A stretch of 63,216 bases of DNA, counting the filler, from Octopus bimaculoides (lineage: Eukaryota), in assembly GCF_001194135.2 (NCBI RefSeq). It is 5 parts of 5 records of this genome, joined end to end, with 100 filler letters (N's around TTAATTAATTAA, not from the genome) between each part and the next. Parts side by side here need not be neighbours in the genome. Positions count along the whole stretch, not along the records: positions 24,949 to 40,199 come from NC_068981.1; 4 more parts are not named here. One strand, given 5' to 3'. This document shows, piece after piece, positions 24,949-40,299 of this stretch. The stretch's first letter is position 1. The number at the start of each line of letters is the position of its first letter. The notes under the pieces were generated by a model. The model was not told the DNA's origin. It saw only the letters and a program-made list of their open reading frames with translations, and did no database searches. Position numbers and translations under genes: made by a program.

Positions 24949-25402
24949 CAAAAAGAAAGAAAAAAAATGTACGGACCCCTAGTATATTTGAATTCATTCT
25001 TGCGTCAGAAAAAAAAAAACGTATGAGTTGAAGATTGAAGGTTTTTCAGTGATAATTACCTACGATATAATAAACAGTACAGACCATTCGTAACAAAACT
25101 TAGTTCACCATTAATGGAGCTTAAGATAAAAACTGTTTCGAAACCGGCTTCTCTCTCCCTCTCGCTCTCTCTCCCCTTCTCTGTTTCTCTACTGAAAGTC
25201 TTTCTTTTCTTAATCACTGATTCTCTCTATCTCTCTCCCCCCTCTCTCTCTTTCTCTCTCTCTACTCATTCCTATCGGAGATTGACACCGCTTGTGGTTT
25301 ACTTCACCGGAGATTAATTCCATCGGATATTAATTAACCCTACCGGAGATTAAGTAGTTTATTACTATTATTACTGTATGCATATATACATATACGTATA
25401 CA

Positions 25403-25441
<39 letters not shown>

Positions 25442-26616
25442 NNNNNNNNNNNNNNNNNNNNNNNNNNNNNNNNNNNNNNNNNNNNNNNNNNNNNNNNNNN
25501 NNNNNNNNNNNNNNNNNNNNNNNNNNNNNNNNNNNNNNNNNATATACATACATACATGTACACACACGCACACACACACACACACATATGCATATATGGA
25601 TTGCTGGATATATATGTGATATGTGCGCATGTGTATATGTGTGTGCGCGTGTGTGTATGAGTTTGCGTGTGTGTGTGTGTGTGTGTGTTTTCTAAGTAAA
25701 AACACACGTATAGTGCAAAGATGAATTAGAAGTCTCTCCTAATTTGGATTCTCATCGTTTTCATCTCCATTTAGACATCCACAATACGATTTTATATTGT
25801 TTTATTTCATTTCCCCATAATTTTATTTATTTATTTGACTCATTTATTTTAATGTTAATGTAGTTACTGCTCATATTCTATTACAATTGAAAGGAAGAAG
25901 ATTCACGAGTTCCACCTCACACCATTTTTGTGCTGATACATATGACCTACCATACACACACACACACACACACACATATATTTATATATATTTATGTTGA
26001 TATACTTATATGTACANNNNNNNNNNNNNNNNNNNNNNNNNNNNNNNNNNNNNNNNNNNNNNNNNNNNNNNNNNNNNNNNNNNNNNNNNNNNNNNNNNNN
26101 NNNNNNNNNNNNNNNNNNNNNNNNNNNNNNNNNNNNNNNNNNNNNNNNNNNNNNNNNNNNNNNNNNNNNNNNNNNNNNNNNNNNNNNNNNNNNNNNNNNN
26201 NNNNNNNNNNNNNNNNNNNNNNNNNNNNNNNNNNNNNNNNNNNNNNNNNNNNNNNNNNNNNNNNNNNNNNNNNNNNNNNNNNNNNNNNNNNNNNNNNNNN
26301 NNNNNNNNNNNNNNNNNNNNNNNNNNNNNNNNNNNNNNNNNNNNNNNNNNNNNNNNNNNNNNNNNNNNNNNNNNNNNNNNNNNNNNNNNNNNNNNNNNNN
26401 NNNNNNNNNNNNNNNNNNNNNNNNNNNNNNNNNNNNNNNNNNNNNNNNNNNNNNNNNNNNNNNNNNNNNNNNNNNNNNNNNNNNNNNNNNNNNNNNNNNN
26501 NNNNNNNNNNNNNNNNNNNNNNNNNNNNNNNNNNNNNNNNNNNNNNNNNNNNNNNNNNNNNNNNNNNNNNNNNNNNNNNNNNNNNNNNNNNNNNNNNNNN
26601 NNNNNNNNNNNNNNNN

Positions 26617-26658
<42 letters not shown>

Positions 26659-26894
26659 GATAGATAAATAGATAGATAGATAGAAAGATAGATAGATATG
26701 TGTGCATGTATGGTATCATAGTTTATGGATTTCCAAGAGAAGGGGAAATAATTCTTTTTCCTTTGAGATATGGGTCCGAGTTCCAGGAACATTCTTCGAG
26801 TCAGCTAAACCAAAAGATTTTAAACCTTATTATTAATTATTTATAGTTTCATATGCAATCCAGTATACATACATACATGAGTGTATGTACTTTT

Positions 26895-27024
26895 ATATAT
26901 AGATATTTTCGATCTAGTTTGGATTCTTTGCCATCAATTTTGAATTCTTTGCCATCAAATTTGAATTCATTGCAATCAAATTTGATGGCAAAGAATCCAA
27001 ACTAGATCGAAAACATCTATATAT
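26895..27024. repeat. 130-bp foldback: 43-bp inverted arms around 21-bp direct subrepeats
   Basis: Arms 26895-26937 and 26982-27024 pair with one mismatch; the 44-bp spacer holds two further copies of the TTTGAATTCTTTGCCATCAA-like unit. Confidence 0.85.
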
Positions 27025-28633
27025 GTGTTTATGTTTGTCCACGCACTGGTAGACAACTGGAGTTGGTTTAATTCTTCCTCGTAACAAGCAGTTCAGCAAA
27101 AGAGACAGCTCCACTAAGTACCAGAATTAAAAACATAAATAATATGATCGATTTGTTGGACTAAACACTTTAAGGCAGTGCCCCAGTATGTCTGTAGTTT
27201 AATAACTAAAAAGTAGAAGATATGAATGAATCTAAGGCGAAGGAATCTCTACGGAACCCTGTTAAGTAAGCGCAACTGTAATTCAATGCACATGGTTGTG
27301 ATGATTGTGTTACACATCGTGTTACACATCGTGTCACGCTGCATTTGCTTGAAGATTGTTAAATGTACATATGTATGTGGAATACATTAAAACAATGAAC
27401 AAGTGGTTCGGTTGATTAATTGATTAAACAATTGAAAGTTTCAGGCATGAATCTTAAGTGGCAGCTCATCTGAGATTCATTCGTAGTATTGTATAAAGCT
27501 GTACATTCCTCGATATTATGAGATATCAAAAGAGGGTTATCTTGCAGAGTCGAAAAATTATCAAGAATGTGGCTCGCGGTTTTCGTTCTGGTTCATTACA
27601 CTCTGAGAGGAAATCCCGCCGAGATCAACATCGCTTTCATATTTCTGCGATCGATAAGGCACCAGGATTGATGTACTGAACTAAACTCTCCCCCAAAAAG
27701 CTGCTACCCTTGTGACTACATTGATTTCAAATTTTAACACAAAGCCAACCATTTCGAAGGAGGGAGTAAATCGATTACATCGACCCCAATACTCAACTGG
27801 TACTTATTTCATCGATCCTAAAAGGATGAAAAGCAAATGGACAACCACGGAATTTGAACTCAGGACATACCGACATACGAAATGCGACTAAGAATTTTGC
27901 CCGGCGTGCGAAGGATTCTGCCAACGCGTCACCTTACCTTGTGATTACGTTGGCGACAGTTATGGGATATAAATGCTGCTGTTGTTTAGTCCTAATTACT
28001 TTTGATAAACTTTTTTTTTTTTNNNNNNNNNNNNNNNNNNNNNNNNNNNNNNNNNNNNNNNNNNNNNNNNNNNNNNNNNNNNNNNNNNNNNNNNNNNNNN
28101 NNNNNNNNNNNNNNNNNNNNNNNNNNNNNNNNNNNNNNNNNNNNNNNNNNNNNNNNNNNNNNNNNNNNNNNNNNNNNNNNNNNNNNNNNNNNNNNNNNNN
28201 NNNNNNNNNNNNNNNNNNNNNNNNNNNNNNNNNNNNNNNNNNNNNNNNNNNNNNNNNNNNNNNNNNNNNNNNNNNNNNNNNNNNNNNNNNNNNNNNNNNN
28301 NNNNNNNNNNNNNNNNNNNNNNNNNNNNNNNNNNNNNNNNNNNNNNNNNNNNNNNNNNNNNNNNNNNNNNNNNNNNNNNNNNNNNNNNNNNNNNNNNNNN
28401 NNNNNNNNNNNNNNNNNNNNNNNNNNNNNNNNNNNNNNNNNNNNNNNNNNNNNNNNNNNNNNNNNNNNNNNNNNNNNNNNNNNNNNNNNNNNNNNNNNNN
28501 NNNNNNNNNNNNNNNNNNNNNNNNNNNNNNNNNNNNNNNNNNNNNNNNNNNNNNNNNNNNNNNNNNNNNNNNNNNNNNNNNNNNNNNNNNNNNNNNNNNN
28601 NNNNNNNNNNNNNNNNNNNNNNNNNNNNNNNNN

Positions 28634-28666
<33 letters not shown>

Positions 28667-29550
28667 CTCTCGATAAGGAGGGTGTGAATGTCTAAAAACG
28701 TCGGATATGTATCTAGGAGTTCTATTGTCCCAAACTAACAGTAAAAAGTGAAGAATATGTGAAAAATATAAAGTAAGAAATATAAAACTTGAACACGGTC
28801 GTGTTTTTGATGAAACACAGACACAGAGATACAGAGATACACAGGCATACAGATAGATACGCACATACATGCGCACATAGACATGTATATAAATTCGTTC
28901 ATTGAAATGTATTGATCATGTGGAATCTTCGAACTGACAATGCAGTTACAGGTACATTTCTGAGTACTTCCCAATCATTAAAAGTTCAAGCCTACTATCA
29001 ATATCTCAGAAGTTCACACCACGGCTGATTCTTCGTTTCTTGTAAATGAGGAGTAACACTTTCGTTGGGGATCTAAACAAGGAAACTGCTCCAGAATGAA
29101 AGAACCATTTTGGTCTAAGGCTTGATTTGTCTCTAAAATTGCAAGAAACGATACATCACAGAAACAGCTGAGAAAAGTGTTTTATGTATATGTATATTCC
29201 CTTTGGGACAACTATTTCATAGACAGGAGGGTTTCAACTGGAAAGTCCTTGATTAGAAGTTTGCTCTGTCAGGGCTAATCTGTGGTGAGCTTCAATGACA
29301 ACGTAAAAAATCATGCGACGGCGTCCGCCGTCGTCTACCTCTACCCCTACCGTTTCCATCACCACTAGGACAACGACGACACCGACCGCCATCAACACTA
29401 TCACCATCATCTCCACTAGAGCCACGACCATGCAGCCCTTCCACCATCACTACTACCACCACTACCATTTCAAGCGACCGATTTAAGCATATGGGGCATT
29501 TCACATACTTCTGGGGCAATTGACACTCACACACAAGCACGCACGCACAA

Positions 29551-29653
<103 letters not shown>

Positions 29654-29787
29654 GACATACACAAATGCACAAACACACATAAAGACACATACATTCAGAC
29701 ACGTACAAATGTACACACACACATGCGCACGCTTACACATACAAACACTCATAGATAAGTACTTATTTGCATCTATAAAACTTTGTT

Positions 29788-29854
29788 ATGGTATTTTTAT
29801 CTTATTTTAACAGAAATATATCTCCTGTTATCGTTTTGCTATTTCTCCTTTCAG
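29788..29854 (+). CDS. Kazal-type inhibitor gene, signal-peptide exon (MVFLSYFNR)NISPVIVLLFLLSG
   Basis: Hydrophobic core, phase-1 donor TCAG|GTATGT at 29855 joining in frame to 33489. Start is either ATG 29788 or an upstream exon spliced at the AG 29812-29813. Confidence 0.7.
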
Positions 29855-29974
29855 GTATGTATTTTCCAAAATATTGTTTTCATTATTTTCAATTAGCAGA
29901 AGCACTCACATCTTATGTGGTTTTATATGGTTTTATACGGCTATGTATATTTTATATTGTTTTAGATAGCTCAT

Positions 29975-31200
29975 GAGTGGATGCTGTTTTCATCAACTTC
30001 GTCAAATCCTTTTATTGTGCATTGCAAACCACTTACGGTGAAGCACTAAGCAATGGGAGTGAGAGCTAATTTTTATGACTGCTTGAAATCCTTTATTCTT
30101 GATCGCAAACAGTCAGGGTACTGGGACATTTGGAAACCAACAAGTATTTGCCCTTGTGCCTCTGTTGCTTGTAGCATACATTATTTAAACAAATGTCAGC
30201 TTGAAACAAATTACTGTACTATGTTAAAAAGATGCAGATGGGAATAATCTGTACCTCGGGATAAAATAAGCGGATTCTGTACACAATAACTTTTACTTAG
30301 ACATAATTCTCATATACTTAGACACAATTCTCATATAAACATATAAAAGTTTTCCATCAAACTTTAGTTTTACAGCTTAATTAAGATCCATAGAAACATC
30401 TGCGATCAGAGACGTCGAAAAATACATCTGATCGTTGCAAGTACCAAATCTCGCTCCAGAAAGTAGAGTGGTTCTTCTTGTATCCACACAACTGATCGCC
30501 GCACACTTATTAACGAATCTGAAAAGCAGCCAGTAACTGAAAGAAATTTTCTATAAATGTCCCTCAGAAATAGTAAAAGGGATTCATTGCTCTTACAGCC
30601 TGGATGTGCGCTAAATATGCACAGTATATCGCAGGCAAAGCCATGAAACAGGTCCCATTTTCTATTGTATGGATTGATACATGGAAACGAACTTCCGAAA
30701 GATGTTGTCTGCTAGGTGCTATACAGCATATTTTCTGAAGCAAGTGAGCGTCACAAGGTGAAGCGAGGTCAAATATGTAAGCCACGAAATACTGTTGCCA
30801 GTCTGTCAGTGTCAGAGTTATTGACGGAACAAAAGAGATATAAAATGAAAGAGATTGACGAAAATAAGATTTGTATCAACCAATCATAATGCGATGGAGC
30901 GGATGGAAAATCAATTAAGTTACTCTCTTGGGAGGCCTGAGCCCTTTTTCACAATAACAAGTCGGGGATATACTTTAAGAAATAATCATATTCTATGCAA
31001 CACAACAACAGACAAGAAATCTGCCCTATCAGTTCGAAGACAGTCCATTTATATCAGAGAATGAATTACTAGACAGCGACCTACAATTATAACTGAAGGG
31101 CTAATATTGTTTAAAAATCCCCTTCATAAAGCGAAGACTTATACATTCGATGAACAAAGCAACAGTTAAGCAAGAGACAATCAGAACGCTTACAGAGTAA
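29975..31200 (+). mobile_element. Degenerate CR1/Jockey-like LINE reverse transcriptase remnant in intron
   Basis: VDAVFINFVKSF, MGVRANFYDCLKSFILDRKQ and decayed YINDL/ADD-like segments match LINE RT motifs; many stops and frameshifts. Confidence 0.5.
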
Positions 31201-31555
31201 CTTCCAAAACTCACAAATACTGTTAACGTCTAAATTGTAGAAACGCACTTCGTTACAAAATAGAAATACATCTTGGACAAGTATCTAATACCGCATTTCT
31301 GACTCTTAATTTAAAAGAACATAAATCAGTTCATTCGATGAACTCGAAAACTGGCAGAATAAACATTTGACACTCTTTAGTTATTTTGTTAATCAATATT
31401 GTCACATTTTTATATATCTTTATCATGTGCTCTTCCTATTGACCGCTTTCTGTTTGCTCATCCTTGTTACAAACTATCTGTATACGTGTAACTTAAATCC
31501 CACATTCTTGCACTGACCTGCTAATCACAATATAGGTATGTTTTGTGAAATAAAT

Positions 31556-31937
31556 GTTGTTGGCACTCCGTCGCTTACGACGTCGAGGGTTCCAGTTGAT
31601 CCGATCAACGGAACAGCCTGCTCGTGAAATTAACGTGCAAGTGGCTGAGCACTCCACAGACACGTGTACCCTTAACGTAGTTCTCGGAGATATTCAGCAT
31701 GACACAGTGTGACAAGGCTGACCCTTTGAACTACAGGCACAACAGAAACAGGAAGTAAGAGTGAGAGAAAGTTGTGGTGAAAGAGTACAGCAGGGTTCGC
31801 CACCATCCCCTGCCGGAGCCTCGGGGAGCTTTAGGTGTTTTCGCTCAATAAACATTCACAACGCCCGGTCTGGGAATCGAAACCGCGATCCTATGACCGC
31901 AAGTCCGCTGCCCTAACCACTGGGCCATTGCACCTCC
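31556..31937 (-). mobile_element. Full-length young tRNA-derived SINE
   Basis: Head GGAGGTGCAATGGCCCAGTGGTTAGGGCAGCGGAC...GTTTCGATTCC (A and B boxes), CpGs intact, (CAA)n tail. Confidence 0.9.
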
Positions 31938-32944
31938 ACGTGAAATATACTACTGCATTATAAGAAGATAGTATCAGATAAATATACACTTTGTTTTAGA
32001 CGATTGATTCGTATGTTAGATATTTCTCATTTACAATAGCTTCTTCATATTCCGTCACAAAAAGTAAATAAAAAAATGTTTTTTCAATTTCCGAACCTCA
32101 GTTCCAGTTTGAAGAAGGCACAGAGAGAATTGAAGACTTTCAGGCATGTTGCACCAGTACATTCATGAACATTGTATTTAGAAACAATGCTTAAAATGAT
32201 TTCCATCATTGATAGTATCCTACAAGTTTTGTGGGTTACAATAGACTGAATGTTAATTGATAGGTAATTGTTATTTAGCCCGTAATACTGGCAGAAGTGT
32301 CACGTCTATTCATTAATTTATAATTTTTATTTTAAGAGCTACGGTGGTTTATTTAACAAAATAAGTGATAATTGCAACAGAATTGAGATAGAAATTCTGT
32401 ATTTGTTCTCTATTTGAATAAATATATTCTCTATTTGAAATCCTTTTTATCCTGCAAATGAATATTTTACTTACTAAATGCATTAAATATTGTTTAAATG
32501 GTTTGTCTTAAGATATAAACGATATTTTCTTTGTTAGTTGATTTTTCTGACACAACTGAAAACGACTAGTACATTTCAAGCAGTTTTATTATTTGAAGGT
32601 TGATGGGTAGCGCATGAATTTCTAAGAATAAATCAGTGAATTTTCTAATTGACCCACTATGCAAGGGTTCTAATATATTAGAACTCATACAGAATGGGTT
32701 GACGGAAAGTGGAGTACAATCGAATGAATTCTCATCAGTTTCTTTATCATAACATTCATCAATAAGGTTTATTACATGGTACATTGTCTTCAATATTTCA
32801 TGGTCTGTGTTGCTTATATATGTATTACTTTTTTGAATTTCACCACAAACTACTTCATTTTCATCTTCATACATCTCTGATATTTTAAAGAAAGGTACGA
32901 ATGCCGCACAATTTCATTCATCTGCCTTGAAAATAGGCAGATAT

Positions 32945-33315
32945 AGCTGTGTGACAAGAAGCTTGCTTCCCGGCCACATGGTCCAGGGTTCAGTCCCAGC
33001 GCGTGGCTCCATGGGCGTGGCACCTTCTCCTATAGCCTCGGGCCGACCAAAGCCTTGTGAGTGGATTTGGTAAACGGAAACTGAAAGAAACCTGTACGTG
33101 TGTGTCTTTGTGTCTGTATCGGTCTTCCACCACCGCTTGACAACCAGTATTGGTGTGTTTGTATCCGTGTAACTTCGCTGTTCGGCAAAAGAGACTGATA
33201 GAATAAGTACCAGACTTCAAAGATAAGTACTGGGGGTTGATTCATTCGACTAAAACCCATGGCGGTGCTCCAGCATGGCCACAGTCTAACGACTGAAACA
33301 AATAAAAGATGAAAG
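32945..33315 (+). mobile_element. Full-length composite SINE
   Basis: GCTGTGTGACAAGAAGCTTGCTTCCC head, GGAAACTGAAAGAAACC centre, GGCGGTGCTCCAGCATGG tail. Confidence 0.85.
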
Positions 33316-33342
33316 ATATATACATTCTACAAGATATACCTT

Positions 33343-33399
33343 ACAATATATCAAAACATGTACAATATATCAAAACATGTACAATATATCAAAACATAT
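33343..33399. repeat. 19-bp tandem triplication
   Basis: ACAATATATCAAAACATGT repeated about three times. Confidence 0.8.
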
Positions 33400-33488
33400 A
33401 CTATGATAGAGGCCAAAGTATTTGTATTGCGTTTTTATATTTATTTTTATCATGTAAAATATACAAATAAGTTCTTTTCTATTACCAG

Positions 33489-33624
33489 GAGCCGTTCTGA
33501 ATACAGCAGCTCCATCTAAACAAGACAACTGTCCACTGTGTATGATGCTTGTTATATTTAAGATATGTGGAACTGATGGAGTCACTTATTCAAACTTTTG
33601 CGAGCTAAACAGAGCAGCTTGCCT
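33489..33624 (+). CDS. Kazal-type inhibitor gene, core exon AVLNTAAPSKQDNCPLCMMLVIFKICGTDGVTYSNFCELNRAAC
   Basis: Acceptor TTCTTTTCTATTACCAG, donor CT|GTAAGT, 136 nt, phase 1/2; Kazal signature C-G-T-D-G-x-T-Y-x-N-x-C-x6-C. Confidence 0.93.
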
Positions 33625-34041
33625 GTAAGTAAAGCTTATGAAGGCAGATTTTGCCATTTCAGTACTAACTACTAACAACCATTTCTTTTCTACAGTCCAC
33701 AAATTACATGTAAATGCATATACAAATATATACATATGATGCTATCAACAACAAACGTGCAGCTGGAGATCTTGGAGAATCTGACGTTAAACATTTTCTT
33801 CAACGAAGATTCGGAGCTAATGCATTCTTCTGTATTGAACAAAATAAAGATCTGTTACAAATTAGCTTTCGTAGTTAAGAACGGATTGAAAAACAAATCA
33901 TTTTCACCACTTCGGAATTTTTTTTTCTTCAGGAACAAACCTCGTTTGAGATTACTTAGTTGTTTAGTGAATCTTTATTTTAAATTAAAGTAAATGTATA
34001 TGTGTGTATGTGTGTGTGTTTATACATATATCGATATAAAA

Positions 34042-34073
<32 letters not shown>

Positions 34074-34573
34074 TATATAACTTGGCTTAAAAGAGAAAAA
34101 AATTAAATGATCATCCTATAGTTATGATTTACATCAACACAATAAATACATATAGCACAATAAATACACGAACACAAGGAACATATCAATATATTACTTA
34201 GAAGAGATATAAGAAATAGAAAACACGTCATCTAAGTCTATTGATGAATTCCGTTGTCTTTGGTAAAGGAGTTTCCAACCCTCGGTGGTATTGGGATATT
34301 TTGGATAGATATACCCCAAAATTGTTTCTTCATATCTCTGCATTCTCTAAGAAGTGCTCAAAGGAGCCAAGGAAATAAATATATTGTTTTTCTTTGACCC
34401 TTTGAGCAATTCCTATAGTTTGCGAACATATGAAGAAACAATTTTTGGACATATCTACCAAATATACATACATTTATACATACGTATACATACATACATA
34501 CATATATAGATATATATATAGATATATATCTATATGTATGATATGCATATATGTGAATATATATATGCATGTA

Positions 34574-34620
<47 letters not shown>

Positions 34621-34862
34621 ACACAATTAAGTTTATTTAAAAGAAAGTTGGTCATCTTCTGTTNNNNNNNNNNTTGGTCATCTTCTGTTGGTCGTTTTTT
34701 CCTCTCATTAGGTACTAAATGTGGTTATTTTGAGAAGTCCACTGTGTGGCGTTATTATTTTTCTGTAATAATGCCCTTTATATAAATATAAACGAATATC
34801 TATCTATATATATAGGTATGTATATGTATGGTATGTATAATTATGAATATATATATATATAT

Positions 34863-35150
34863 ATCATCATCATCGTTTAACCTCCGCTTTCCATGCTAGC
34901 ATGGGTTGGACGATTTGACTGAGGACTGGCGAACCAGATGGCTGCATCATGCTCCAATCTAATATGGCAGAGTTTCTACAGCTGGATGCCCTTCCTATCG
35001 CCAACCACTCCGAGAGTGTAGTGGGTGCTTTTACGTGCCACCGGCACGAGGGCCAGTCCGGCGGTACTGGCAACGGCCACTCTCAAATGGTGCTTTTACG
35101 TGCCACCTGGATAGGAGTCAGTCCAGAGGCGCTGGTAACGACTTCGTTCG
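34863..35150 (-). mobile_element. SINE with (GAT)n tail in Kazal intron
   Basis: Near-identical to 24604-24848. Confidence 0.85.
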
Positions 35151-35653
35151 AATGTTTTGTAAATATATATATATATATATATATATATANNNNNNNNNNN
35201 NNNNNNNNNNNNNNNNNNNNNNNNNNNNNNNNNNNNNNNNNNNNNNNNNNNNNNNNNNNNNNNNNNNNNNNNNNNNNNNNNNNNNNNNNNNNNNNNNNNN
35301 NNNNNNNNNNNNNNNNNNNNNNNNNNNNNNNNNNNNNNNNNNNNNNNNNNNNNNNNNNNNNNNNNNNNNNNNNNNNNNNNNNNNNNNNNNNNNNNNNNNN
35401 NNNNNNNNNNNNNNNNNNNNNNNNNNNNNNNNNNNNNNNNNNNNNNNNNNNNNNNNNNNNNNNNNNNNNNNNNNNNNNNNNNNNNNNNNNNNNNNNNNNN
35501 NNNNNNNNNNNNNNNNNNNNNNNGTCCGATTATGTAACCCTGCGCTCTTCAACATATATATGTGTGTGTGTGTCTGTCTGTATGTGTGTGTGTGTATGTG
35601 TGTATGTATGTATGTATGTATGTATCTTTAATCTATTTTTCTTATCGCTGCAG

Positions 35654-35726
35654 GGGGCAGACAGTGAACGGCGTACCAGTAAAAACACTTCATTACGGTC
35701 CATGCAAAGGATCTGTGGTTGGATAA
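35654..35726 (+). CDS. Kazal-type inhibitor gene, last coding exon (L)GQTVNGVPVKTLHYGPCKGSVVG*
   Basis: Acceptor TTTTTCTTATCGCTGCAG, phase 2, supplies the sixth Cys in the H-Y-G-P-C motif; TAA at 35724-35726. Confidence 0.9.
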
Positions 35727-35765
35727 AGAAAAAGCAAAGAGAACGTTGTTATAATTATGAAAGTG

Positions 35766-35771
35766 AATAAA
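35766..35771 (+). promoter_or_regulatory. Polyadenylation signal of the Kazal gene
   Basis: AATAAA 40 nt after the stop codon. Confidence 0.65.
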
Positions 35772-35959
35772 ATATAACTACGTAATATTATGTTGGTTTC
35801 TTTTTACAGCATATTCTGATACTTTATCAGGTGCAGTGCAATTCCAATGCAGCTGTGTGCGTTCCGTGGAAGAGCTGTATTTGTTCATTACAGCTGAAGA
35901 TCGACGCCATTCAGAAGCAATGACTTCCGCCCCCCCTCCCACACATATGCACGTACATA

Positions 35960-35991
<32 letters not shown>

Positions 35992-36284
35992 TTGCACTGT
36001 ACTTCACGTTGCTACAGCCCACTCAGCAAATAAAAATGAGTTGCATTTGTAATTCAAAGAGCCAGCCTTGTCACGTTGAAAATCCTGGAGAACTACTTTA
36101 AGGGTACGTGCGTCAGTGGAGTGTTCAGTTAATTTCACGAGCAAGCTCTTTTGTTGATCGGATCAACTGGAGCACTCGTCGTCGTAACCGACGGAATGCC
36201 ATTAAATATTATCTCTACTATAGCCACAAAGAGTGAAATTTTACAGGAGGGGGCTAGTCGACTACATCGATTCAGTGTTCAACT

Positions 36285-36412
36285 ATGTAAAAGCATCTAG
36301 CAGCTACCTTTGACGGACTGGCGTCCCGTCCAGGTGGGGAACCTATATGCCACTGAAACCGGGAAACCGGCCCTTATTAACCAGCCACGACTCGAGAAAG
36401 AACAAACAGCAA
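36285..36412 (+). mobile_element. 5'-truncated SINE inserted into another SINE
   Basis: 12-bp duplication CAGTGTTCAACT at 36273-36284 and 36413-36424. Confidence 0.8.
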
Positions 36413-37256
36413 CAGTGTTCAACTGGTTCTTATTTTATCGATTCTAAAATGCTGTAAAGCAAGATCGACTACGGCAGAATTTGAACTCAGAACGTAAAGA
36501 CCGAAAAAAAAAAAATGCTGCGAAGCATTATGCTCGATGTGCAAACTACTCTGCCAAACAGCCGCCTTTTGAAAAGTTTTTTTTCTTTTACTTGTTTCAG
36601 TCATTTGACTGTGGCCATGCTGGAGCACCGCCTTTAGTCGGGCAAATCGATCCCAGGACTTATTCTTTGTAAGCCTAGTACTTATTCTATCGACTTCTTT
36701 TGCCGAACCGCTAAGTTACGGCTATGTAAAGACGCCAGCATCGGTTGTTAAGCACTGTTGGGGAGACAAACACACACGCACACACGCNNNNNNNNNNNNN
36801 NNNNNNNNNNNNNNNNNNNNNNNNNNNNNNNNNNNNNNNNNNNNNNNNNNNNNNNNNNNNNNNNNNNNNNNNNNNNNNNNNNNNNNNNNNNNNNNNNNNN
36901 NNNNNNNNNNNNNNNNNNNNNNNNNNNNNNNNNNNNNNNNNNNNNNNNNNNNNNNNNNNNNNNNNNNNNNNNNNNNNNNNNNNNNNNNNNNNNNNNNNNN
37001 NNNNNNNNNNNNNNNNNNNNNNNNNNNNNNNNNNNNNNNNNNNNNNNNNNNNNNNNNNNNNNNNNNNNNNNNNNNNNNNNNNNNNNNNNNNNNNNNNNNN
37101 NNNNNNNNNNNNNNNNNNNNNNNNNNNNNNNNNNNNNNNNNNNNNNNNNNNNNNNNNNNNNNNNNNNNNNNNNNNNNNNNNNNNNNNNNNNNNNNNNNNN
37201 NNNNNNNNNNNNNNNNNNNNNNNNNNNNNNNNNNNNNNNNNNNNNNNNNNNNNNNN

Positions 37257-37735
37257 GGTAAGTCGATTAAATCAACCCCAGTACTCAACTGGTACATATT
37301 TTATCGTAGCCTGAAAGGATGAAAAGCAAAGTTGACCTTGGCAGAATTTGAAGACTGAATGTAAAAACGGTAGAAATGCCACAAAGCATTTTGCCCGTCG
37401 GGAAAGGAGGGGGGGGGGGTAAGTCGATTAAATCAACCCCAGTACTCAACTGGTACATATTTTATCGTAGCCTGAAAGGATGAAAAGCAAAGTTGACCTT
37501 GGCAGAATTTGAACATTGAATGTATAGACGGTAGAAATGCCACAAAGCATTTTGCCGGTCGGGAGAGGGGGTAAGTCGATTAAATCGACCCCCAATGCTC
37601 AACTGGTACATATCTTATCGTAGCCTGAATGGTTAACAGCAAAGTTGACCTTGGCAGAATTTGAATACTGATTCTAAAGGCTGTAGAAATTCCACAAAGC
37701 ATTTTGCCCGTCGGGCTAACAATTCTGCTGGCTAC
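37257..37735 (-). repeat. Tandem trimer of a SINE 5' half
   Basis: Units start GGTAAGTCGATTAAATC at 37257, 37418 and 37570 (periods 161 and 152 bp), joined by G-rich linkers. Confidence 0.9.
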
Positions 37736-38410
37736 TTCTTATACTCAAGAAATATAAGAATATATAATTTTCGGTATAAAAGCAAGCAGCAACTCCGGTA
37801 GAAACGCACGATAAATACACATCCACGTTACAGACTTTTGTTTTTTCCTACACATATACCGACAGCAAGCAGCATTCTTGGTTATAGCTACATTGTGACT
37901 ATACATCTATAGACATAGACTGTGCACACTCATTTCAAAACCTTTCCACAAGGAAATATGTTTATAACTTCCTTCATGCTGCTATGCAGGTGACGCCGAT
38001 TCCTAGCAACCAACCGAATGTCGATTTGAAAGTGCTTCCAGTAATAAAACCTTGTTTCTTTGCTCATATATGAGTCAGTATTAGTGTCAATATATATAGT
38101 AATGTGTGAATGTCTGCATGAGGATTAAGGAATCTAATTAATATTATGCGTGTGTATATAGTCTTCATATATGTATGTATATCTCACTGTTTACATAATG
38201 AACGCGCACTCATACACTCACACATTCACACACTCACTCACACACACACCACACAGATATTTTAGCCTATATGTTTTTATGTACCTCTGTATATACCCAG
38301 TATGCATAAATAATACACAAAATACACACAAACACACACACACACGCACACACACAGAGACGTGTGTGTGTATGTGTGTGTAGATATGCTGAGGCGAGCA
38401 AGAATATATA

Positions 38411-38463
<53 letters not shown>

Positions 38464-39311
38464 NNNNNNNNNNNNNNNNNNNNNNNNNNNNNNNNNNNNN
38501 NNNNNNNNNNNNNNNNNNNNNNNNNNNNNNNNNNNNNNNNNNNNNNNNNNNNNNNNNNNNNNNNNNNNNNNNNNNNNNNNNNNNNNNNNNNNNNNNNNNN
38601 NNNNNNNNNNNNNNNNNNNNNNNNNNNNNNNNNNNNNNATATATATATATATATATATATACATACGCATACACATATGCACAGAGATGTGCATGTTTAT
38701 TAACGCATGTCTCTGACTATATTTCGCACACACATAGATACACATACACACATACATGCACGCACACTCGCGCGCGCACATAGACACTTACGTGCTTTGC
38801 GCGTGATTTTGTTAAATTTCATACCTACAAGGAGCGTACTCAGTTTAAGGAAATGCTTTGTTAGTACAAAACATGCAATTTAGCAAAGCACCCGTCAGCA
38901 TTACAAGTAATAATCTTAGATGTCTTTGAGAAGGCAAAAAGCGCAAAACGTTTTTCTTTTGATATGGGGTTTCAAATTCTGAGACGCTCTCAATATAAAG
39001 AACATTACGCCCTGGCGCAAATTTTCAATTGTGATACCTTTGCCAAATACTAATTGGTTTAACTTTTTAAATTGCTTTGAAATTCTAAAATACCATTCGT
39101 GAATCAACTTTAGATATTACACGAACTTGGCTGATAGTATTAGATTTTTGAAAAAAGTTTTGAATCGATATCTCTTAGATATGGAATTTAAGCACAACAT
39201 TCCTGCTATAGTGTGTAAGCTAGCCTTCTTATGGCTGTATAAGTTTCGAAAACGTGTGCTCATGTTAGCATGTGCTCGGATAGCCATACACATAGACTCG
39301 CATATGCATGC

Positions 39312-39402
<91 letters not shown>

Positions 39403-40299
39403 TGTGAAAGTGTGTATGTGTCTGCTTAAGGATGTGCATATATGCATACGTTTGCGTGAGCTCGTTTATATACTTATATACATACATAATACGTGTACAA
39501 AAATACATGAATAAACACATATACACACTTATATATACATGTATGTATGCATGTATGTACGTATGTATGTATGTATGTATGTACGTACGTACGTACGTAC
39601 TCATCTATCCATTCTTTCTAACTTTGTAAAAATTCGGAACTTTCGGCTGCCAGTAATTCAGATGCCCACGCGTGTGTGTATCCATATACGTGAGAAAGGA
39701 TGTCAGTGGCTCTATATGTTCATATGTGGGTGTGTATGTGTGTGCGTGTATGTATGTGAGAAAGAGAGAGAGACTGAGAGAGAGAGAGAGAAATAAATAA
39801 AGAGTGTTGTGTTGATGTGTAAAGATATCTTAACTATAGATTATAAGATAGAACAGAAAACGTAAGATGTGACGTTGACACTTTCCCTTGGGCATTGAAG
39901 AATATCGGATGCATTGGAGCGAATCTAACACCAAATTGAAACACAGACACACATATACACTCACACACACCTGCACACACATGTACACCAATACTTTTAC
40001 TGAATTTAATACAGTACACTTCTTATTTTCTTCTTTGCTTCCAAAAAATCCCTTATCAGATGAAAGTAAAACAGATTTTATGCAGAAAAGTTGTTTTAAT
40101 TATTGAAAGAAATAACACTTATTTAAATTACAGTATGCCTACTATGGCCTACATATAGAAAAGGGGGGAACAATTTCACAAGATTCTGCGTAATTCAATN
40201 NNNNNNNNNNNNNNNNNNNNNNNNNNNNNNNNNNNNNNNNNNNTTAATTAATTAANNNNNNNNNNNNNNNNNNNNNNNNNNNNNNNNNNNNNNNNNNNN

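What the first reader, a model, noticed from the sequence alone, without database searches (positions are those of the whole stretch)
29788..35771. Secreted single-domain Kazal protein with an atypical hydrophobic binding loop, invisible to the ORF track
Seen: three exons splice in frame (phases 1 and 2) to give ...NISPVIVLLFLLSGAVLNTAAPSKQDNCPLCMMLVIFKICGTDGVTYSNFCELNRAACLGQTVNGVPVKTLHYGPCKGSVVG*, with six Cys spaced C-2-C-8-C-10-C-6-C-17-C. Established: canonical Kazal inhibitors have 7 residues between Cys2 and Cys3, usually ending P-V-C, with P1 second after Cys2; SPINK genes have a similarly placed phase-2 intron after Cys5. Here the loop has 8 residues, no Pro, is almost wholly hydrophobic (MMLVIFKI, nominal P1 Met), and the CELNRAAC helix is follistatin/agrin-like. 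Inference: unusual specificity (chymotrypsin/elastase/subtilisin-like) or a non-inhibitory role. Kazal-fold peptides occur in molluscan venom and defence secretions.
Basis: partly seen in the sequence, partly recalled or inferred. Interest (0 to 1): 0.7.

Follow-up and report, generated by a model that had tools for sequence, protein, structure and literature searches.

The report
Octopus single-domain Kazal inhibitor gene
This is a small three-exon Octopus bimaculoides gene for a probably secreted single Kazal-type protease-inhibitor domain; it is an ordinary member of a well-known family with a slightly odd, very greasy binding loop, and the public annotation holds only its C-terminal 51 residues.

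Summary
Exons 29788-29854, 33489-33624 and 35654-35726 have GT..AG borders and intron phases 1 and 2. They splice to a 91-aa protein with a hydrophobic N-terminal leader and one complete Kazal domain (Pfam Kazal_2, 38 bits, E 1.4e-9). An AlphaFold model (pLDDT 85) matches only Kazal folds.

Both assembly gaps lie inside intron 2 and touch no codon. The 10-N gap looks like an unmerged 16-nt contig overlap.

The sequence is Octopus bimaculoides. UniProt A0A0L8GEA9 (51 aa) is the same gene, uses the same exon 2-3 junction, and starts at internal Met41.

- The "8-residue loop" is a one-residue shift of Cys2 inside an unchanged Cys1-Cys3 frame. Agrin Kazal domain 7 and about 1% of surveyed domains have the same spacing.
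- A hydrophobic P1 (Met or Leu) is the commonest state among the closest short relatives: molluscan "turripeptide OL11-like" precursors and the Anemonia elastase inhibitor.
- What is unusual is the missing P4' Pro, a non-aromatic P2', and an all-hydrophobic P2-P3' stretch.

Most likely it is a standard-mechanism inhibitor of chymotrypsin-, elastase- or subtilisin-type proteases. Expression, secretion and activity are untested. It is a new member of a known kind, of low to moderate interest.

The parts
29788..29854 (+). Exon 1 (coding part): ATG plus MVFLSYFNRNISPVIVLLFLLS and the first base of Gly23; a putative signal peptide. The donor GT is at 29855-56.
   Evidence: An in-frame stop TAA lies at 29776-78. 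The hydrophobic core I11-L26 reaches Kyte-Doolittle values above 3. Among 87 ATG..GT phase-1 candidate exons in the 8.5 kb upstream of exon 2, it is the only one with a strong hydrophobic core (3.86) and an 8/9 donor match. There is no transcript evidence. An alternative acceptor at 29812-13 (ttttaacAG|A) would make this an internal exon.
29855..33488 (+). Intron 1 (phase 1), 3,634 nt, without gaps.
   Evidence: GT..AG borders with a polypyrimidine tract before the acceptor. Its ORFs have no Pfam match.
33489..33624 (+). Exon 2: the end of the leader, the N-terminal stretch (AVLNTAAPSKQDN), and the Kazal domain from Cys1 (Cys37) to Cys5 (Cys67).
   Evidence: Kazal_2 scores 34.0 bits on this exon alone. 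The frame is closed upstream by a stop at 33455-57 with no ATG before Cys1, so an upstream coding exon is required.
33539..33568 (+). Putative reactive-site loop, Cys40-MMLVIFKI-Cys49. P1 is Met42 if counted from Cys2, or Leu43 by gapless homology and counting back from Cys3.
33625..35653 (+). Intron 2 (phase 2), holding both assembly gaps (34664-34673 and 35190-35523).
   Evidence: The donor read-through is CTG TAA, an immediate stop. The 10-N gap is flanked by identical 16-mers at 34648-34663 and 34674-34689.
35654..35726 (+). Exon 3 (coding part): the last base of Leu68, then GQTVNGVPVKTLHYGPC(Cys85)KGSVVG and stop TAA at 35724-26.
   Evidence: It completes the Kazal profile to 48/48. The same junction is used in UniProt A0A0L8GEA9.
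35766..35771 (+). AATAAA polyadenylation signal, 40 nt after the stop.
   Evidence: Its function is inferred from the consensus only.

Best explanation
This is a real Octopus bimaculoides gene of three coding exons. It encodes a 91-aa precursor: an N-terminal signal peptide, inferred to be cleaved after Ala25 or Ala30, followed by one non-classical group I Kazal domain of about 61-66 residues.

The scaffold that holds a canonical inhibitory loop is intact:
- six Cys;
- the CGxDGxTY hairpin;
- the spacer Asn58 two residues before Cys4;
- the C-terminal HYGPC.

The protein most likely acts by the standard (Laskowski) mechanism. The loop Cys40-Cys49 would dock in the active site of a serine protease like a substrate and block it. 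P1 would be Met42 or Leu43, flanked by Leu/Val/Ile/Phe, which fits chymotrypsin-, elastase- or subtilisin-type enzymes rather than trypsin.

Shown: the gene structure, the domain identity and the predicted fold. Inferred: secretion, expression, which residue is P1, and any inhibitory activity.
For: - Splicing and frame.
- Pfam Kazal_2 and Kazal_1 score above their gathering cut-offs across the exon junction.
- The AlphaFold2 model has pLDDT 84.9 and pTM 0.69, with hairpin, helix and strand as in Kazal domains.
- Foldseek against the PDB returns only Kazal and follistatin-type folds. The closest are infestin-1 (rmsd 1.9 A, TM 0.84), the Anemonia elastase inhibitor (1.8 A) and GmSPI-2 (1.7 A).
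- The nearest short relatives are signal-peptide plus single-Kazal precursors of molluscs ("turripeptide OL11-like" of Biomphalaria and Magallana, and turrid turripeptides) and the Anemonia elastase inhibitor, at 32-40% identity, BLASTP E 6e-12 and 1e-10.
- In that peer group P1 is most often Met or Leu and P1' Ile.
- The spacer Asn is conserved.
- In the literature, a hydrophobic P1 in Kazal inhibitors goes with elastase and subtilisin inhibition (PMC8131977), and group I non-classical Kazals inhibit subtilisin (PMC3082530).
- Exon 1 is the only good leader-encoding candidate upstream.
- The stop and AATAAA follow directly after the domain.
Against: - No transcript, orthologue or proteomic evidence could be obtained. 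The exact 91-aa protein is absent from a 15-billion-protein collection. No contig encoding the annotated product was on record. No close short relative appears among the best 150 phmmer hits. No paper mentions the accession.
- The loop lacks the P4' Pro and the aromatic P2' that 88-97% and about 75-88% of relatives have, and Cys2 is out of register. Loop geometry, and therefore inhibition, could be impaired.
- TATAAAA lies only 8 nt before the ATG. If it is a working TATA box, the transcription start would fall downstream of this ATG.
- Exon 3 sits on a separate small contig.
Confidence: 0.6

Rival explanations
1. The gene is real and the protein secreted, but the Kazal domain no longer inhibits proteases. 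The greasy, Pro-less loop would serve as a binding surface for another target (a receptor, ion channel, growth factor or matrix component). Precedents are follistatin, agrin and SPARC Kazal modules, and the cone-snail Kazal peptide conkazal-M1, which is neuroactive.
For: - The best sequence matches in the PDB are the non-inhibitory agrin and follistatin domains.
- The loop departs from the inhibitor consensus at P4' Pro and P2' Tyr, and is all-hydrophobic from P2 to P3', which none of 925 loops shows.
- Conkazal-M1 combines weak subtilisin inhibition (Ki 1.1 uM) with an effect on neuronal calcium transients (PMC13101452).
- Turripeptides have been classed as putative neurotoxins (PMC4202326).
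Against: - The inhibitor-supporting features are retained: the spacer Asn, Cys at P3, and an unbranched hydrophobic residue at P1.
- Very hydrophobic loops such as IMALIPV, PLILLPV and PMIWFPV occur in ordinary short Kazal proteins.
- Pfam reports no EGF-like follistatin N-terminal subdomain.
- There is no tissue or target evidence of any kind.
Confidence: 0.2
2. The locus is not a working gene as modelled. It may be an unexpressed or decaying single-domain relic of the multi-Kazal (agrin-like) repertoire. Or the proposed exon 1 is a chance match, so the only product would be the annotated 51-aa fragment from Met41, which lacks Cys1 and Cys2.
For: - The public model (A0A0L8GEA9) starts at Met41.
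- No full-length protein, orthologue or transcript-derived protein was found in very large collections.
- The locus is embedded in microsatellites and repeats and is fragmented by gaps.
- A TATA-like motif directly before the ATG would put the transcription start downstream of it.
- The loop is the kind of region that drifts under relaxed constraint.
Against: - There are no stops or frameshifts in 91 codons, and all six Cys and every near-invariant Kazal residue are intact.
- Both introns have consensus splice sites in compatible phases.
- Exon 1 is uniquely good among 87 candidates.
- A product from Met41 would leave Cys4 and Cys5 unpaired, so the annotated start is more likely an annotation artefact caused by the missing upstream ATG in exon 2.
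Confidence: 0.15
3. The gene extends further 5'. The segment at 29814-29854 would be an internal micro-exon, entered through the acceptor at 29812-13, and the true start codon would lie in an unseen upstream exon, possibly in or beyond the gaps.
For: A good polypyrimidine tract plus AG (tttttatcttattttaacAG) lies inside the proposed exon 1. Three gaps lie within 4.8 kb upstream.
Against: - ATG 29788 has G at -3 and +4 and is the first start after an in-frame stop.
- The 22 residues it opens already form a complete n-region plus h-region.
- No other Kazal core exists in the piece, so any extension would add only leader sequence.
Confidence: 0.05

Closest known systems
Molluscan single-domain Kazal precursors annotated "turripeptide OL11-like" (Biomphalaria glabrata P0210, Magallana gigas P0245, turrid turripeptides Pal9.2, Ici9.1 and OL11-like)
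   Same: - Same architecture: a signal peptide plus one group I non-classical Kazal domain in a precursor of about 70-90 aa.
- 32-40% identity; BLASTP E 6e-12 to the oyster protein.
- Hydrophobic P1 (Met or Leu) and hydrophobic P1'.
- C-x10-C-x6-C core and the spacer Asn.
   Different: - Their spacing is C-3-C-7-C...C-13-C. Here it is C-2-C-8-C...C-17-C, that is, Cys2 shifted by one and four extra residues (VNGV region) before the last strand.
- They keep the [YW]-x-P-V ending of the loop; here it is I-F-K-I.
- Venom-gland origin is not shown for the octopus gene.
Anemonia elastase inhibitor (PI-actitoxin-Avd5a, PDB 1Y1B), the type member of non-classical group I Kazal inhibitors
   Same: - 38% identity over the whole domain in a gapless Cys1-Cys3 alignment.
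- The predicted fold superposes at 1.8 A.
- Its P1 Met aligns with Leu43 here.
   Different: The same loop and spacing differences as above. It is a cnidarian protein with proven elastase inhibition; no activity is known here.
Agrin / follistatin-type Kazal modules (e.g. agrin, PDB 8S9P, Kazal domain 7, CPRC + 8 residues + C)
   Same: - Best per-domain sequence score in the PDB (26.5 bits).
- The same C-2-C-8-C-10-C-6-C spacing and the CEL..AAC helix.
- The closest domains overall are in agrin-like multi-Kazal proteins of crustaceans, sea urchin, hemichordate and soft coral.
   Different: - Those are 5- to 30-domain matrix proteins, each Kazal often preceded by an EGF-like subdomain; here there is a single free domain with a leader.
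- The agrin loop is Pro-rich, not hydrophobic.
- Cys5-Cys6 is 13 residues there, not 17.
CmPI-II (Cenchritis muricatus) and conkazal-M1 (Conus magus), experimentally characterised single-domain molluscan Kazal proteins
   Same: They are single secreted Kazal domains from molluscs that inhibit subtilisin A and elastases (PMC8131977, PMC13101452). CmPI-II (2N71) appears among the fold matches.
   Different: - CmPI-II is assigned to non-classical group 3 and has P1 Arg.
- Conkazal-M1 has P1 Glu, an extra disulfide and extended termini.
- Neither was retrieved as a close sequence relative here.
Classical SPINK / ovomucoid Kazal inhibitors
   Same: Same fold and mechanism class, Cys5-Cys6 spacing of 17, and a phase-2 intron near the end of the helix.
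   Different: The classical Cys1 position (far upstream of Cys2) and C4-x2-C5 are not present. Sequence scores are weak (E 0.003 to 0.8).

Membership tests
Kazal domain (Pfam PF07648 / PF00050; MEROPS I1) | Profile HMM score above the curated gathering threshold | tested here: met
   Kazal_2 scores 38.3 bits against a 22.8 cut-off; Kazal_1 scores 32.5 against 21. Each is one stretch over residues 37-85. The mature form scores 39.8 and 33.5 bits.
Kazal domain (Pfam PF07648 / PF00050; MEROPS I1) | Six conserved Cys, with the CGxDGxTY hairpin and the helix carrying Cys4 and Cys5 | tested here: met
   Cys37, 40, 49, 60, 67 and 85 are present, as are G50, D52, G53, T55, Y56 and N58. They align to invariant or near-invariant columns.
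Kazal domain (Pfam PF07648 / PF00050; MEROPS I1) | Fold: a short three-stranded sheet plus one alpha-helix | tested here: met
   The AF2 model has pLDDT 84.9. All Foldseek PDB matches are Kazal or follistatin-type domains, with TM to target up to 0.84. This is a prediction, not an experiment.
Kazal domain (Pfam PF07648 / PF00050; MEROPS I1) | Disulfide pattern 1-5, 2-4, 3-6 | not testable with these tools
It needs mass spectrometry or a solved structure, all the more because Cys2 is shifted by one residue.
Kazal domain (Pfam PF07648 / PF00050; MEROPS I1) | Canonical inhibition of a serine protease through the Cys2-Cys3 loop | not testable with these tools
The sequence proxies are mixed: the spacer Asn and P3 Cys are present, while the P4' Pro and aromatic P2' are absent.
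Non-classical group I Kazal inhibitors (Hemmi classification; Anemonia elastase inhibitor, crayfish inhibitor, CrSPI-1) | Cys1-Cys5 bridge displaced towards the C-terminus: Cys1 only 2-4 residues before Cys2, and Cys5 six residues after Cys4 | tested here: met
   The spacing is C-2-C ... C-6-C. The definition is from PMC3082530. The spacing C4-x6-C5 is shared with 1,014 of 1,220 surveyed domains.
Turripeptide OL11-like molluscan single-Kazal precursors | Signal peptide followed by exactly one Kazal domain, in a precursor under about 100 aa | tested here: met
   The precursor is 91 aa with a hydrophobic leader. There is only one Kazal core in 15 kb. It aligns with P0210, P0245, P0244 and P0249. 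The leader rests on sequence only.
Turripeptide OL11-like molluscan single-Kazal precursors | Cys framework C-3-C-7-C-10-C-6-C-13-C with the loop ending x-P-V-C | tested here: not met
   Here the framework is C-2-C-8-C-10-C-6-C-17-C and the loop ends F-K-I-C. I therefore treat it as a relative, not a member.
Turripeptide OL11-like molluscan single-Kazal precursors | Expression in a venom or salivary gland | not testable with these tools
   No transcript data could be reached.
Follistatin (FS) module of agrin / follistatin / SPARC | N-terminal EGF-like (FOLN) subdomain with extra disulfides preceding the Kazal subdomain | tested here: not met
   Pfam reports only Kazal families. Only about 6-11 mature residues, with no Cys, precede Cys1.
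Classical Kazal (SPINK / ovomucoid) | Cys1 about 7 residues before Cys2, and C4-x2-C5 | tested here: not met
   The spacings are 2 and 6. Matches to SPINK1 and ovomucoid are weak (E 0.0026 to 0.8).

The most novel reading that the evidence does not exclude
The Pro-less, all-hydrophobic, register-shifted loop marks a cephalopod-specific Kazal peptide that has been re-purposed. It would be a secreted salivary, venom or skin peptide whose loop binds a non-protease target, or a lipid or membrane surface. That would parallel the dual-function cone-snail conkazal-M1, and it has been missed in cephalopod venom catalogues because the gene is annotated only as a 51-aa fragment.
Probability: 0.08. Interest if true: 0.6.

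Novelty: new member of a known kind. Interest (0 to 1): 0.25.

Why it matters
- Annotation. The public model of this octopus gene (A0A0L8GEA9, 51 aa) lacks the leader and the first two cysteines. The corrected 91-aa model turns a meaningless fragment into a complete secreted Kazal protein. Short multi-exon genes for secreted peptides are easily missed in this way.
- Biology. It adds a cephalopod example to the single-domain, hydrophobic-P1 Kazal peptides known from gastropods, bivalves and cnidarians.
- Inhibitor design. It offers a natural test of how far the canonical loop tolerates change: a Cys2 register shift, no P4' Pro, and five consecutive hydrophobic residues.
- Limit. None of this changes what is known about how Kazal proteins work unless the loop proves to have a new target.

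Tried and rejected
- Multi-domain gene. A six-frame motif scan of the whole piece found only one Kazal core.
- Hidden exon in the gaps. It is excluded by domain completeness and by the canonical Cys5-Cys6 spacing.
- Kazal-like extracellular loop of an OATP/SLCO transporter, with the "leader" being a transmembrane helix. I considered this from my own knowledge and rejected it: those domains have C4-x3-C5 and are followed by further transmembrane exons. Here the spacing is C4-x6-C5, a stop follows Cys6 by six codons, and Pfam gives no OATP match.
- Other candidate first exons. 87 were scanned and none is comparable.
- Transcript or contig evidence. The annotated 51-aa product has no encoding contig on record. 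The exact 91-aa sequence is not in the collection.
- Orthologues. The word-index search found only the gene's own fragment. The exhaustive phmmer list is dominated by multi-Kazal proteins, so short relatives scoring below about 80 bits were not visible. The profile search gave short relatives but no cephalopod one among the 120 listed.
- Rfam on the piece: no match.
- Pfam on six intronic or flanking ORFs: no match.
- Literature. No paper on octopus Kazal proteins or on this accession was found.
- Loop backbone angles to fix P1. Model coordinates are not exposed to scripts.

Full report
**What is in the sequence**

The piece (24949-40199) is AT-rich (37% G+C), rich in microsatellites, and broken by seven N runs into eight contigs.
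- Exon 1, 29788-29854, with donor CAG|GTATGT.
- Exon 2, 33489-33624, preceded by ttcttttctattaccAG and followed by GTAAGT.
- Exon 3, 35654-35726, preceded by ttttcttatcgctgcAG and ending in TAA.

The introns are phase 1 and phase 2, and the spliced CDS of 276 nt translates to:

MVFLSYFNRNISPVIVLLFLLSGAVLNTAAPSKQDNCPLCMMLVIFKICGTDGVTYSNFCELNRAACLGQTVNGVPVKTLHYGPCKGSVVG (91 aa)

An in-frame TAA (29776-78) lies three codons before the ATG. AATAAA lies 40 nt after the stop.

**The gaps (tested first)**

Both gaps named by the scan program lie within intron 2 (33625-35653), so no reading frame crosses a gap.
- Exons 1 and 2 lie on one uninterrupted 6,030-nt contig. Exon 3 lies on a separate 1,264-nt contig.
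- Continuity across the scaffold joins can be tested only indirectly. Exon 2 alone matches Pfam Kazal_2 up to profile position 33 of 48 (34.0 bits). Exon 3 supplies the missing C-terminal strand and Cys6 in the right phase, completing the profile (39.8 bits) and raising Kazal_1 from 25.2 to 33.5 bits.
- The resulting Cys5-Cys6 spacing of 17 is a standard Kazal value, so a further exon hidden in the 334-N gap is implausible.
- The 10-N gap is flanked on both sides by the same 16-mer TTGGTCATCTTCTGTT. That pattern indicates two overlapping contig ends that were not merged.
- The larger gap starts in a (TA)n run.
- What remains open is whether the small exon-3 contig could derive from a paralogue.

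**Identity**

The word-index search of 5.8 billion proteins returned a single hit. It is a 51-aa "Kazal-like domain-containing protein" of Octopus bimaculoides (UniRef100_A0A0L8GEA9), 100% identical to residues 41-91.
- The window is therefore O. bimaculoides.
- The public model uses the same exon 2-3 junction but begins at the internal Met41.
- That start is explained by the sequence. In the exon-2 frame there is a stop at 33455-57 and no ATG before Cys1, so the first start codon is Met41.
- A product from Met41 would lack Cys1 and Cys2 and leave Cys4 and Cys5 unpaired. An upstream coding exon is therefore required.
- I scanned the 8.5 kb upstream for ATG-initiated exons ending in a phase-1 GT.
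- The leader has an n-region (with Arg9), a 16-residue h-region (I11-L26), and small residues at S23/A25 and T28/A30 that fit the -3/-1 rule. Secretion is inferred from this; no signal-peptide predictor was available.
- The exact 91-aa sequence is not in a 15-billion-protein collection, so the full-length model appears to be new.

**Domain and fold**

- Pfam gives Kazal_2 at 38.3 bits (E 1.4e-9) and Kazal_1 at 32.5 bits, both above their cut-offs, as one stretch over residues 37-85.
- An AlphaFold2 model of the mature part, built on an alignment of 73 related domains, has pLDDT 84.9 and pTM 0.69 with the expected hairpin, helix and C-terminal strand.
- Foldseek against the PDB returns only Kazal or follistatin-type structures. 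The closest superpositions are infestin-1 (1.9 A), the Anemonia elastase inhibitor (1.8 A) and GmSPI-2 (1.7 A).
- By sequence, the best PDB matches are individual agrin Kazal domains, rhodniin and follistatin.
- With Cys1 two residues before Cys2 and Cys5 six residues after Cys4, the domain belongs to the non-classical group I Kazals as defined in PMC3082530.
- No second Kazal core exists in any frame of the piece. The domain is followed by six codons and a stop, so the gene is single-domain.

**How unusual is the loop?**

I extracted 1,220 Kazal domains from the 150 best hits of an exhaustive phmmer search of 1.84 billion representatives. Those checked by name are mostly agrin-like multi-Kazal proteins of crustaceans, sea urchin, hemichordate and soft coral. 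I extracted another 116 domains from the 120 short Kazal proteins found with a profile search.

| Feature | Multi-Kazal set | Short-protein set |
|---|---|---|
| Cys2-Cys3 loop of 7 residues | 87% of the 1,066 loops of 6-9 residues | 96% |
| Cys2-Cys3 loop of 8 residues | 8% | 1 of 116 |
| Commonest P1 | Arg 18%, Lys 11%; Leu 8%, Met 7% | Met 16%, Leu 15% |
| P1' Ile | 25% | 41% |
| P2' Tyr / Trp / Phe | Tyr 47%, Phe 16% | Tyr 64%, Trp 12%, Phe 12% |
| P4' Pro | 88% | 97% |
| P5' Val | 83% | 95% |

The P-site rows are for the seven-residue loops only (925 and 111 loops).

What this shows:
1. The 8-residue loop is uncommon but not unknown.
2. The octopus Cys1-to-Cys3 distance (11 residues) is the modal value (635 of 1,022). 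MAFFT and BLASTP align this stretch to relatives without gaps: CPLCMMLVIFKIC against CPLICTMQYDPVC of the Anemonia inhibitor. The "extra" loop residue is therefore a one-position shift of Cys2, not an insertion. The same C-2-C-8-C arrangement occurs in agrin Kazal domain 7 and in 8 other surveyed domains.
3. A hydrophobic P1 is normal. Loops such as PMIYGPV (Biomphalaria), PMIWFPV (Littorina), TMQYDPV (Anemonia), IMALIPV and PLILLPV are ordinary.
4. The truly unusual points are these:
   - no Pro at P4' and no aromatic residue at P2';
   - five consecutive hydrophobic residues from P2 to P3' (none of 925 loops);
   - a mean loop hydropathy of 2.46, second of 1,067;
   - four extra residues between Cys5 and Cys6 compared with the closest single-domain relatives.
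5. P1 is ambiguous: Met42 if counted from Cys2, or Leu43 if counted back from Cys3 or taken by gapless homology. Either predicts the same class of target.

**Closest relatives**

The profile search recovered short signal-peptide plus single-Kazal precursors:
- "turripeptide OL11" of Biomphalaria glabrata;
- "turripeptide OL11-like" of Magallana gigas (40% identity over 57 residues, E 6e-12);
- turrid turripeptides Pal9.2 and Ici9.1;
- Littorina and Lymnaea proteins;
- the Anemonia elastase inhibitor (38% identity, E 1e-10).

Turripeptides are described as Kazal-dominated venom-gland peptides (PMC4202326). A cone-snail Kazal peptide, conkazal-M1, inhibits subtilisin A and also dampens neuronal calcium transients (PMC13101452). 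The snail inhibitor CmPI-II inhibits trypsin, elastases and subtilisin A. The same paper summarises that hydrophobic P1 residues favour elastase- and subtilisin-type targets (PMC8131977).

The octopus protein shares the architecture and the P1 type of this group but not its exact Cys framework or its loop ending. I therefore call it a relative rather than a member.

**Mechanism**

- Best explanation (0.6): a secreted standard-mechanism inhibitor aimed at proteases with a hydrophobic S1 pocket.
- Rival (0.2): a Kazal scaffold whose greasy loop binds something else.
- Rival (0.15): an unexpressed or decaying locus, or a wrong exon 1.
- Rival (0.05): a further 5' exon. This would change only the leader.

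Weaknesses of the best explanation:
- There is no transcript, orthologue or proteomic evidence.
- A TATAAAA lies 8 nt before the ATG. If functional, it would place the transcription start downstream of the ATG.
- The scaffold join before exon 3 is unverified.

**The intron comparison**

From my own knowledge of SPINK1 numbering (the splice variant c.194+2T>C; P1 Lys41, Cys58, Cys61, Cys79), SPINK1 intron 3 is phase 2 in codon 65. That is seven codons after Cys4 and 14 before Cys6. Here the phase-2 intron is in codon 68, eight codons after Cys4 and 17 before Cys6. The placement is similar and the phase is the same, but identity of position is not established.

**Verdict**

The finding is an ordinary kind of gene with a mildly unusual loop, plus a useful correction of a truncated public gene model. 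It is a new member of a known kind; interest 0.25.

Noticed in passing
window 34648-34689: The 10-N assembly gap (34664-34673) is flanked on both sides by the identical 16-mer TTGGTCATCTTCTGTT. This looks like two overlapping contig ends that were never merged, so the gap is probably artefactual and the true sequence about 26 nt shorter.
   Followed up: partly
window 29774-29780: TATAAAA lies only 8 nt upstream of the proposed start codon and contains the in-frame stop TAA (29776-78). If it is a real TATA box, transcription would start downstream of ATG 29788 and the leader would need another source.
   Followed up: no
window 33623-33628: Reading through the exon-2 donor gives CTG TAA, an immediate stop. 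Retention of intron 2 would yield a product truncated right after Cys5 and lacking Cys6.
   Followed up: no
window 37257-37730 (related pieces at 27817-27882 and 36444-36509): There are three tandem copies of a 161-nt unit (93% and 67% identity to the first). Related 66-nt segments occur elsewhere in the piece. This is a dispersed, SINE-like repeat family, and Rfam gave no tRNA or other RNA match.
   Followed up: partly
window 29520-29660, 34575-34620, 35560-35630, 39320-39400: Long microsatellites border the gene parts: (AC)n about 140 nt upstream of the ATG, (TCTA)n in intron 2, (TG)n/(TATG)n running up to about 30 nt before the exon-3 acceptor, and (GT)n(GA)n downstream. Most assembly gaps begin or end in such runs.
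   Followed up: no
window 35024-35153: A 65-nt unit (GGTGCTTTTACGTGCCACC...) is duplicated in tandem at 72% identity on the small 516-nt contig between the two intron-2 gaps. It does not appear to be coding.
   Followed up: no
window 32566-32874 (- strand): A 102-aa ATG-initiated ORF lies on the opposite strand inside intron 1. It has no Pfam match and is probably chance or a decayed repeat.
   Followed up: partly
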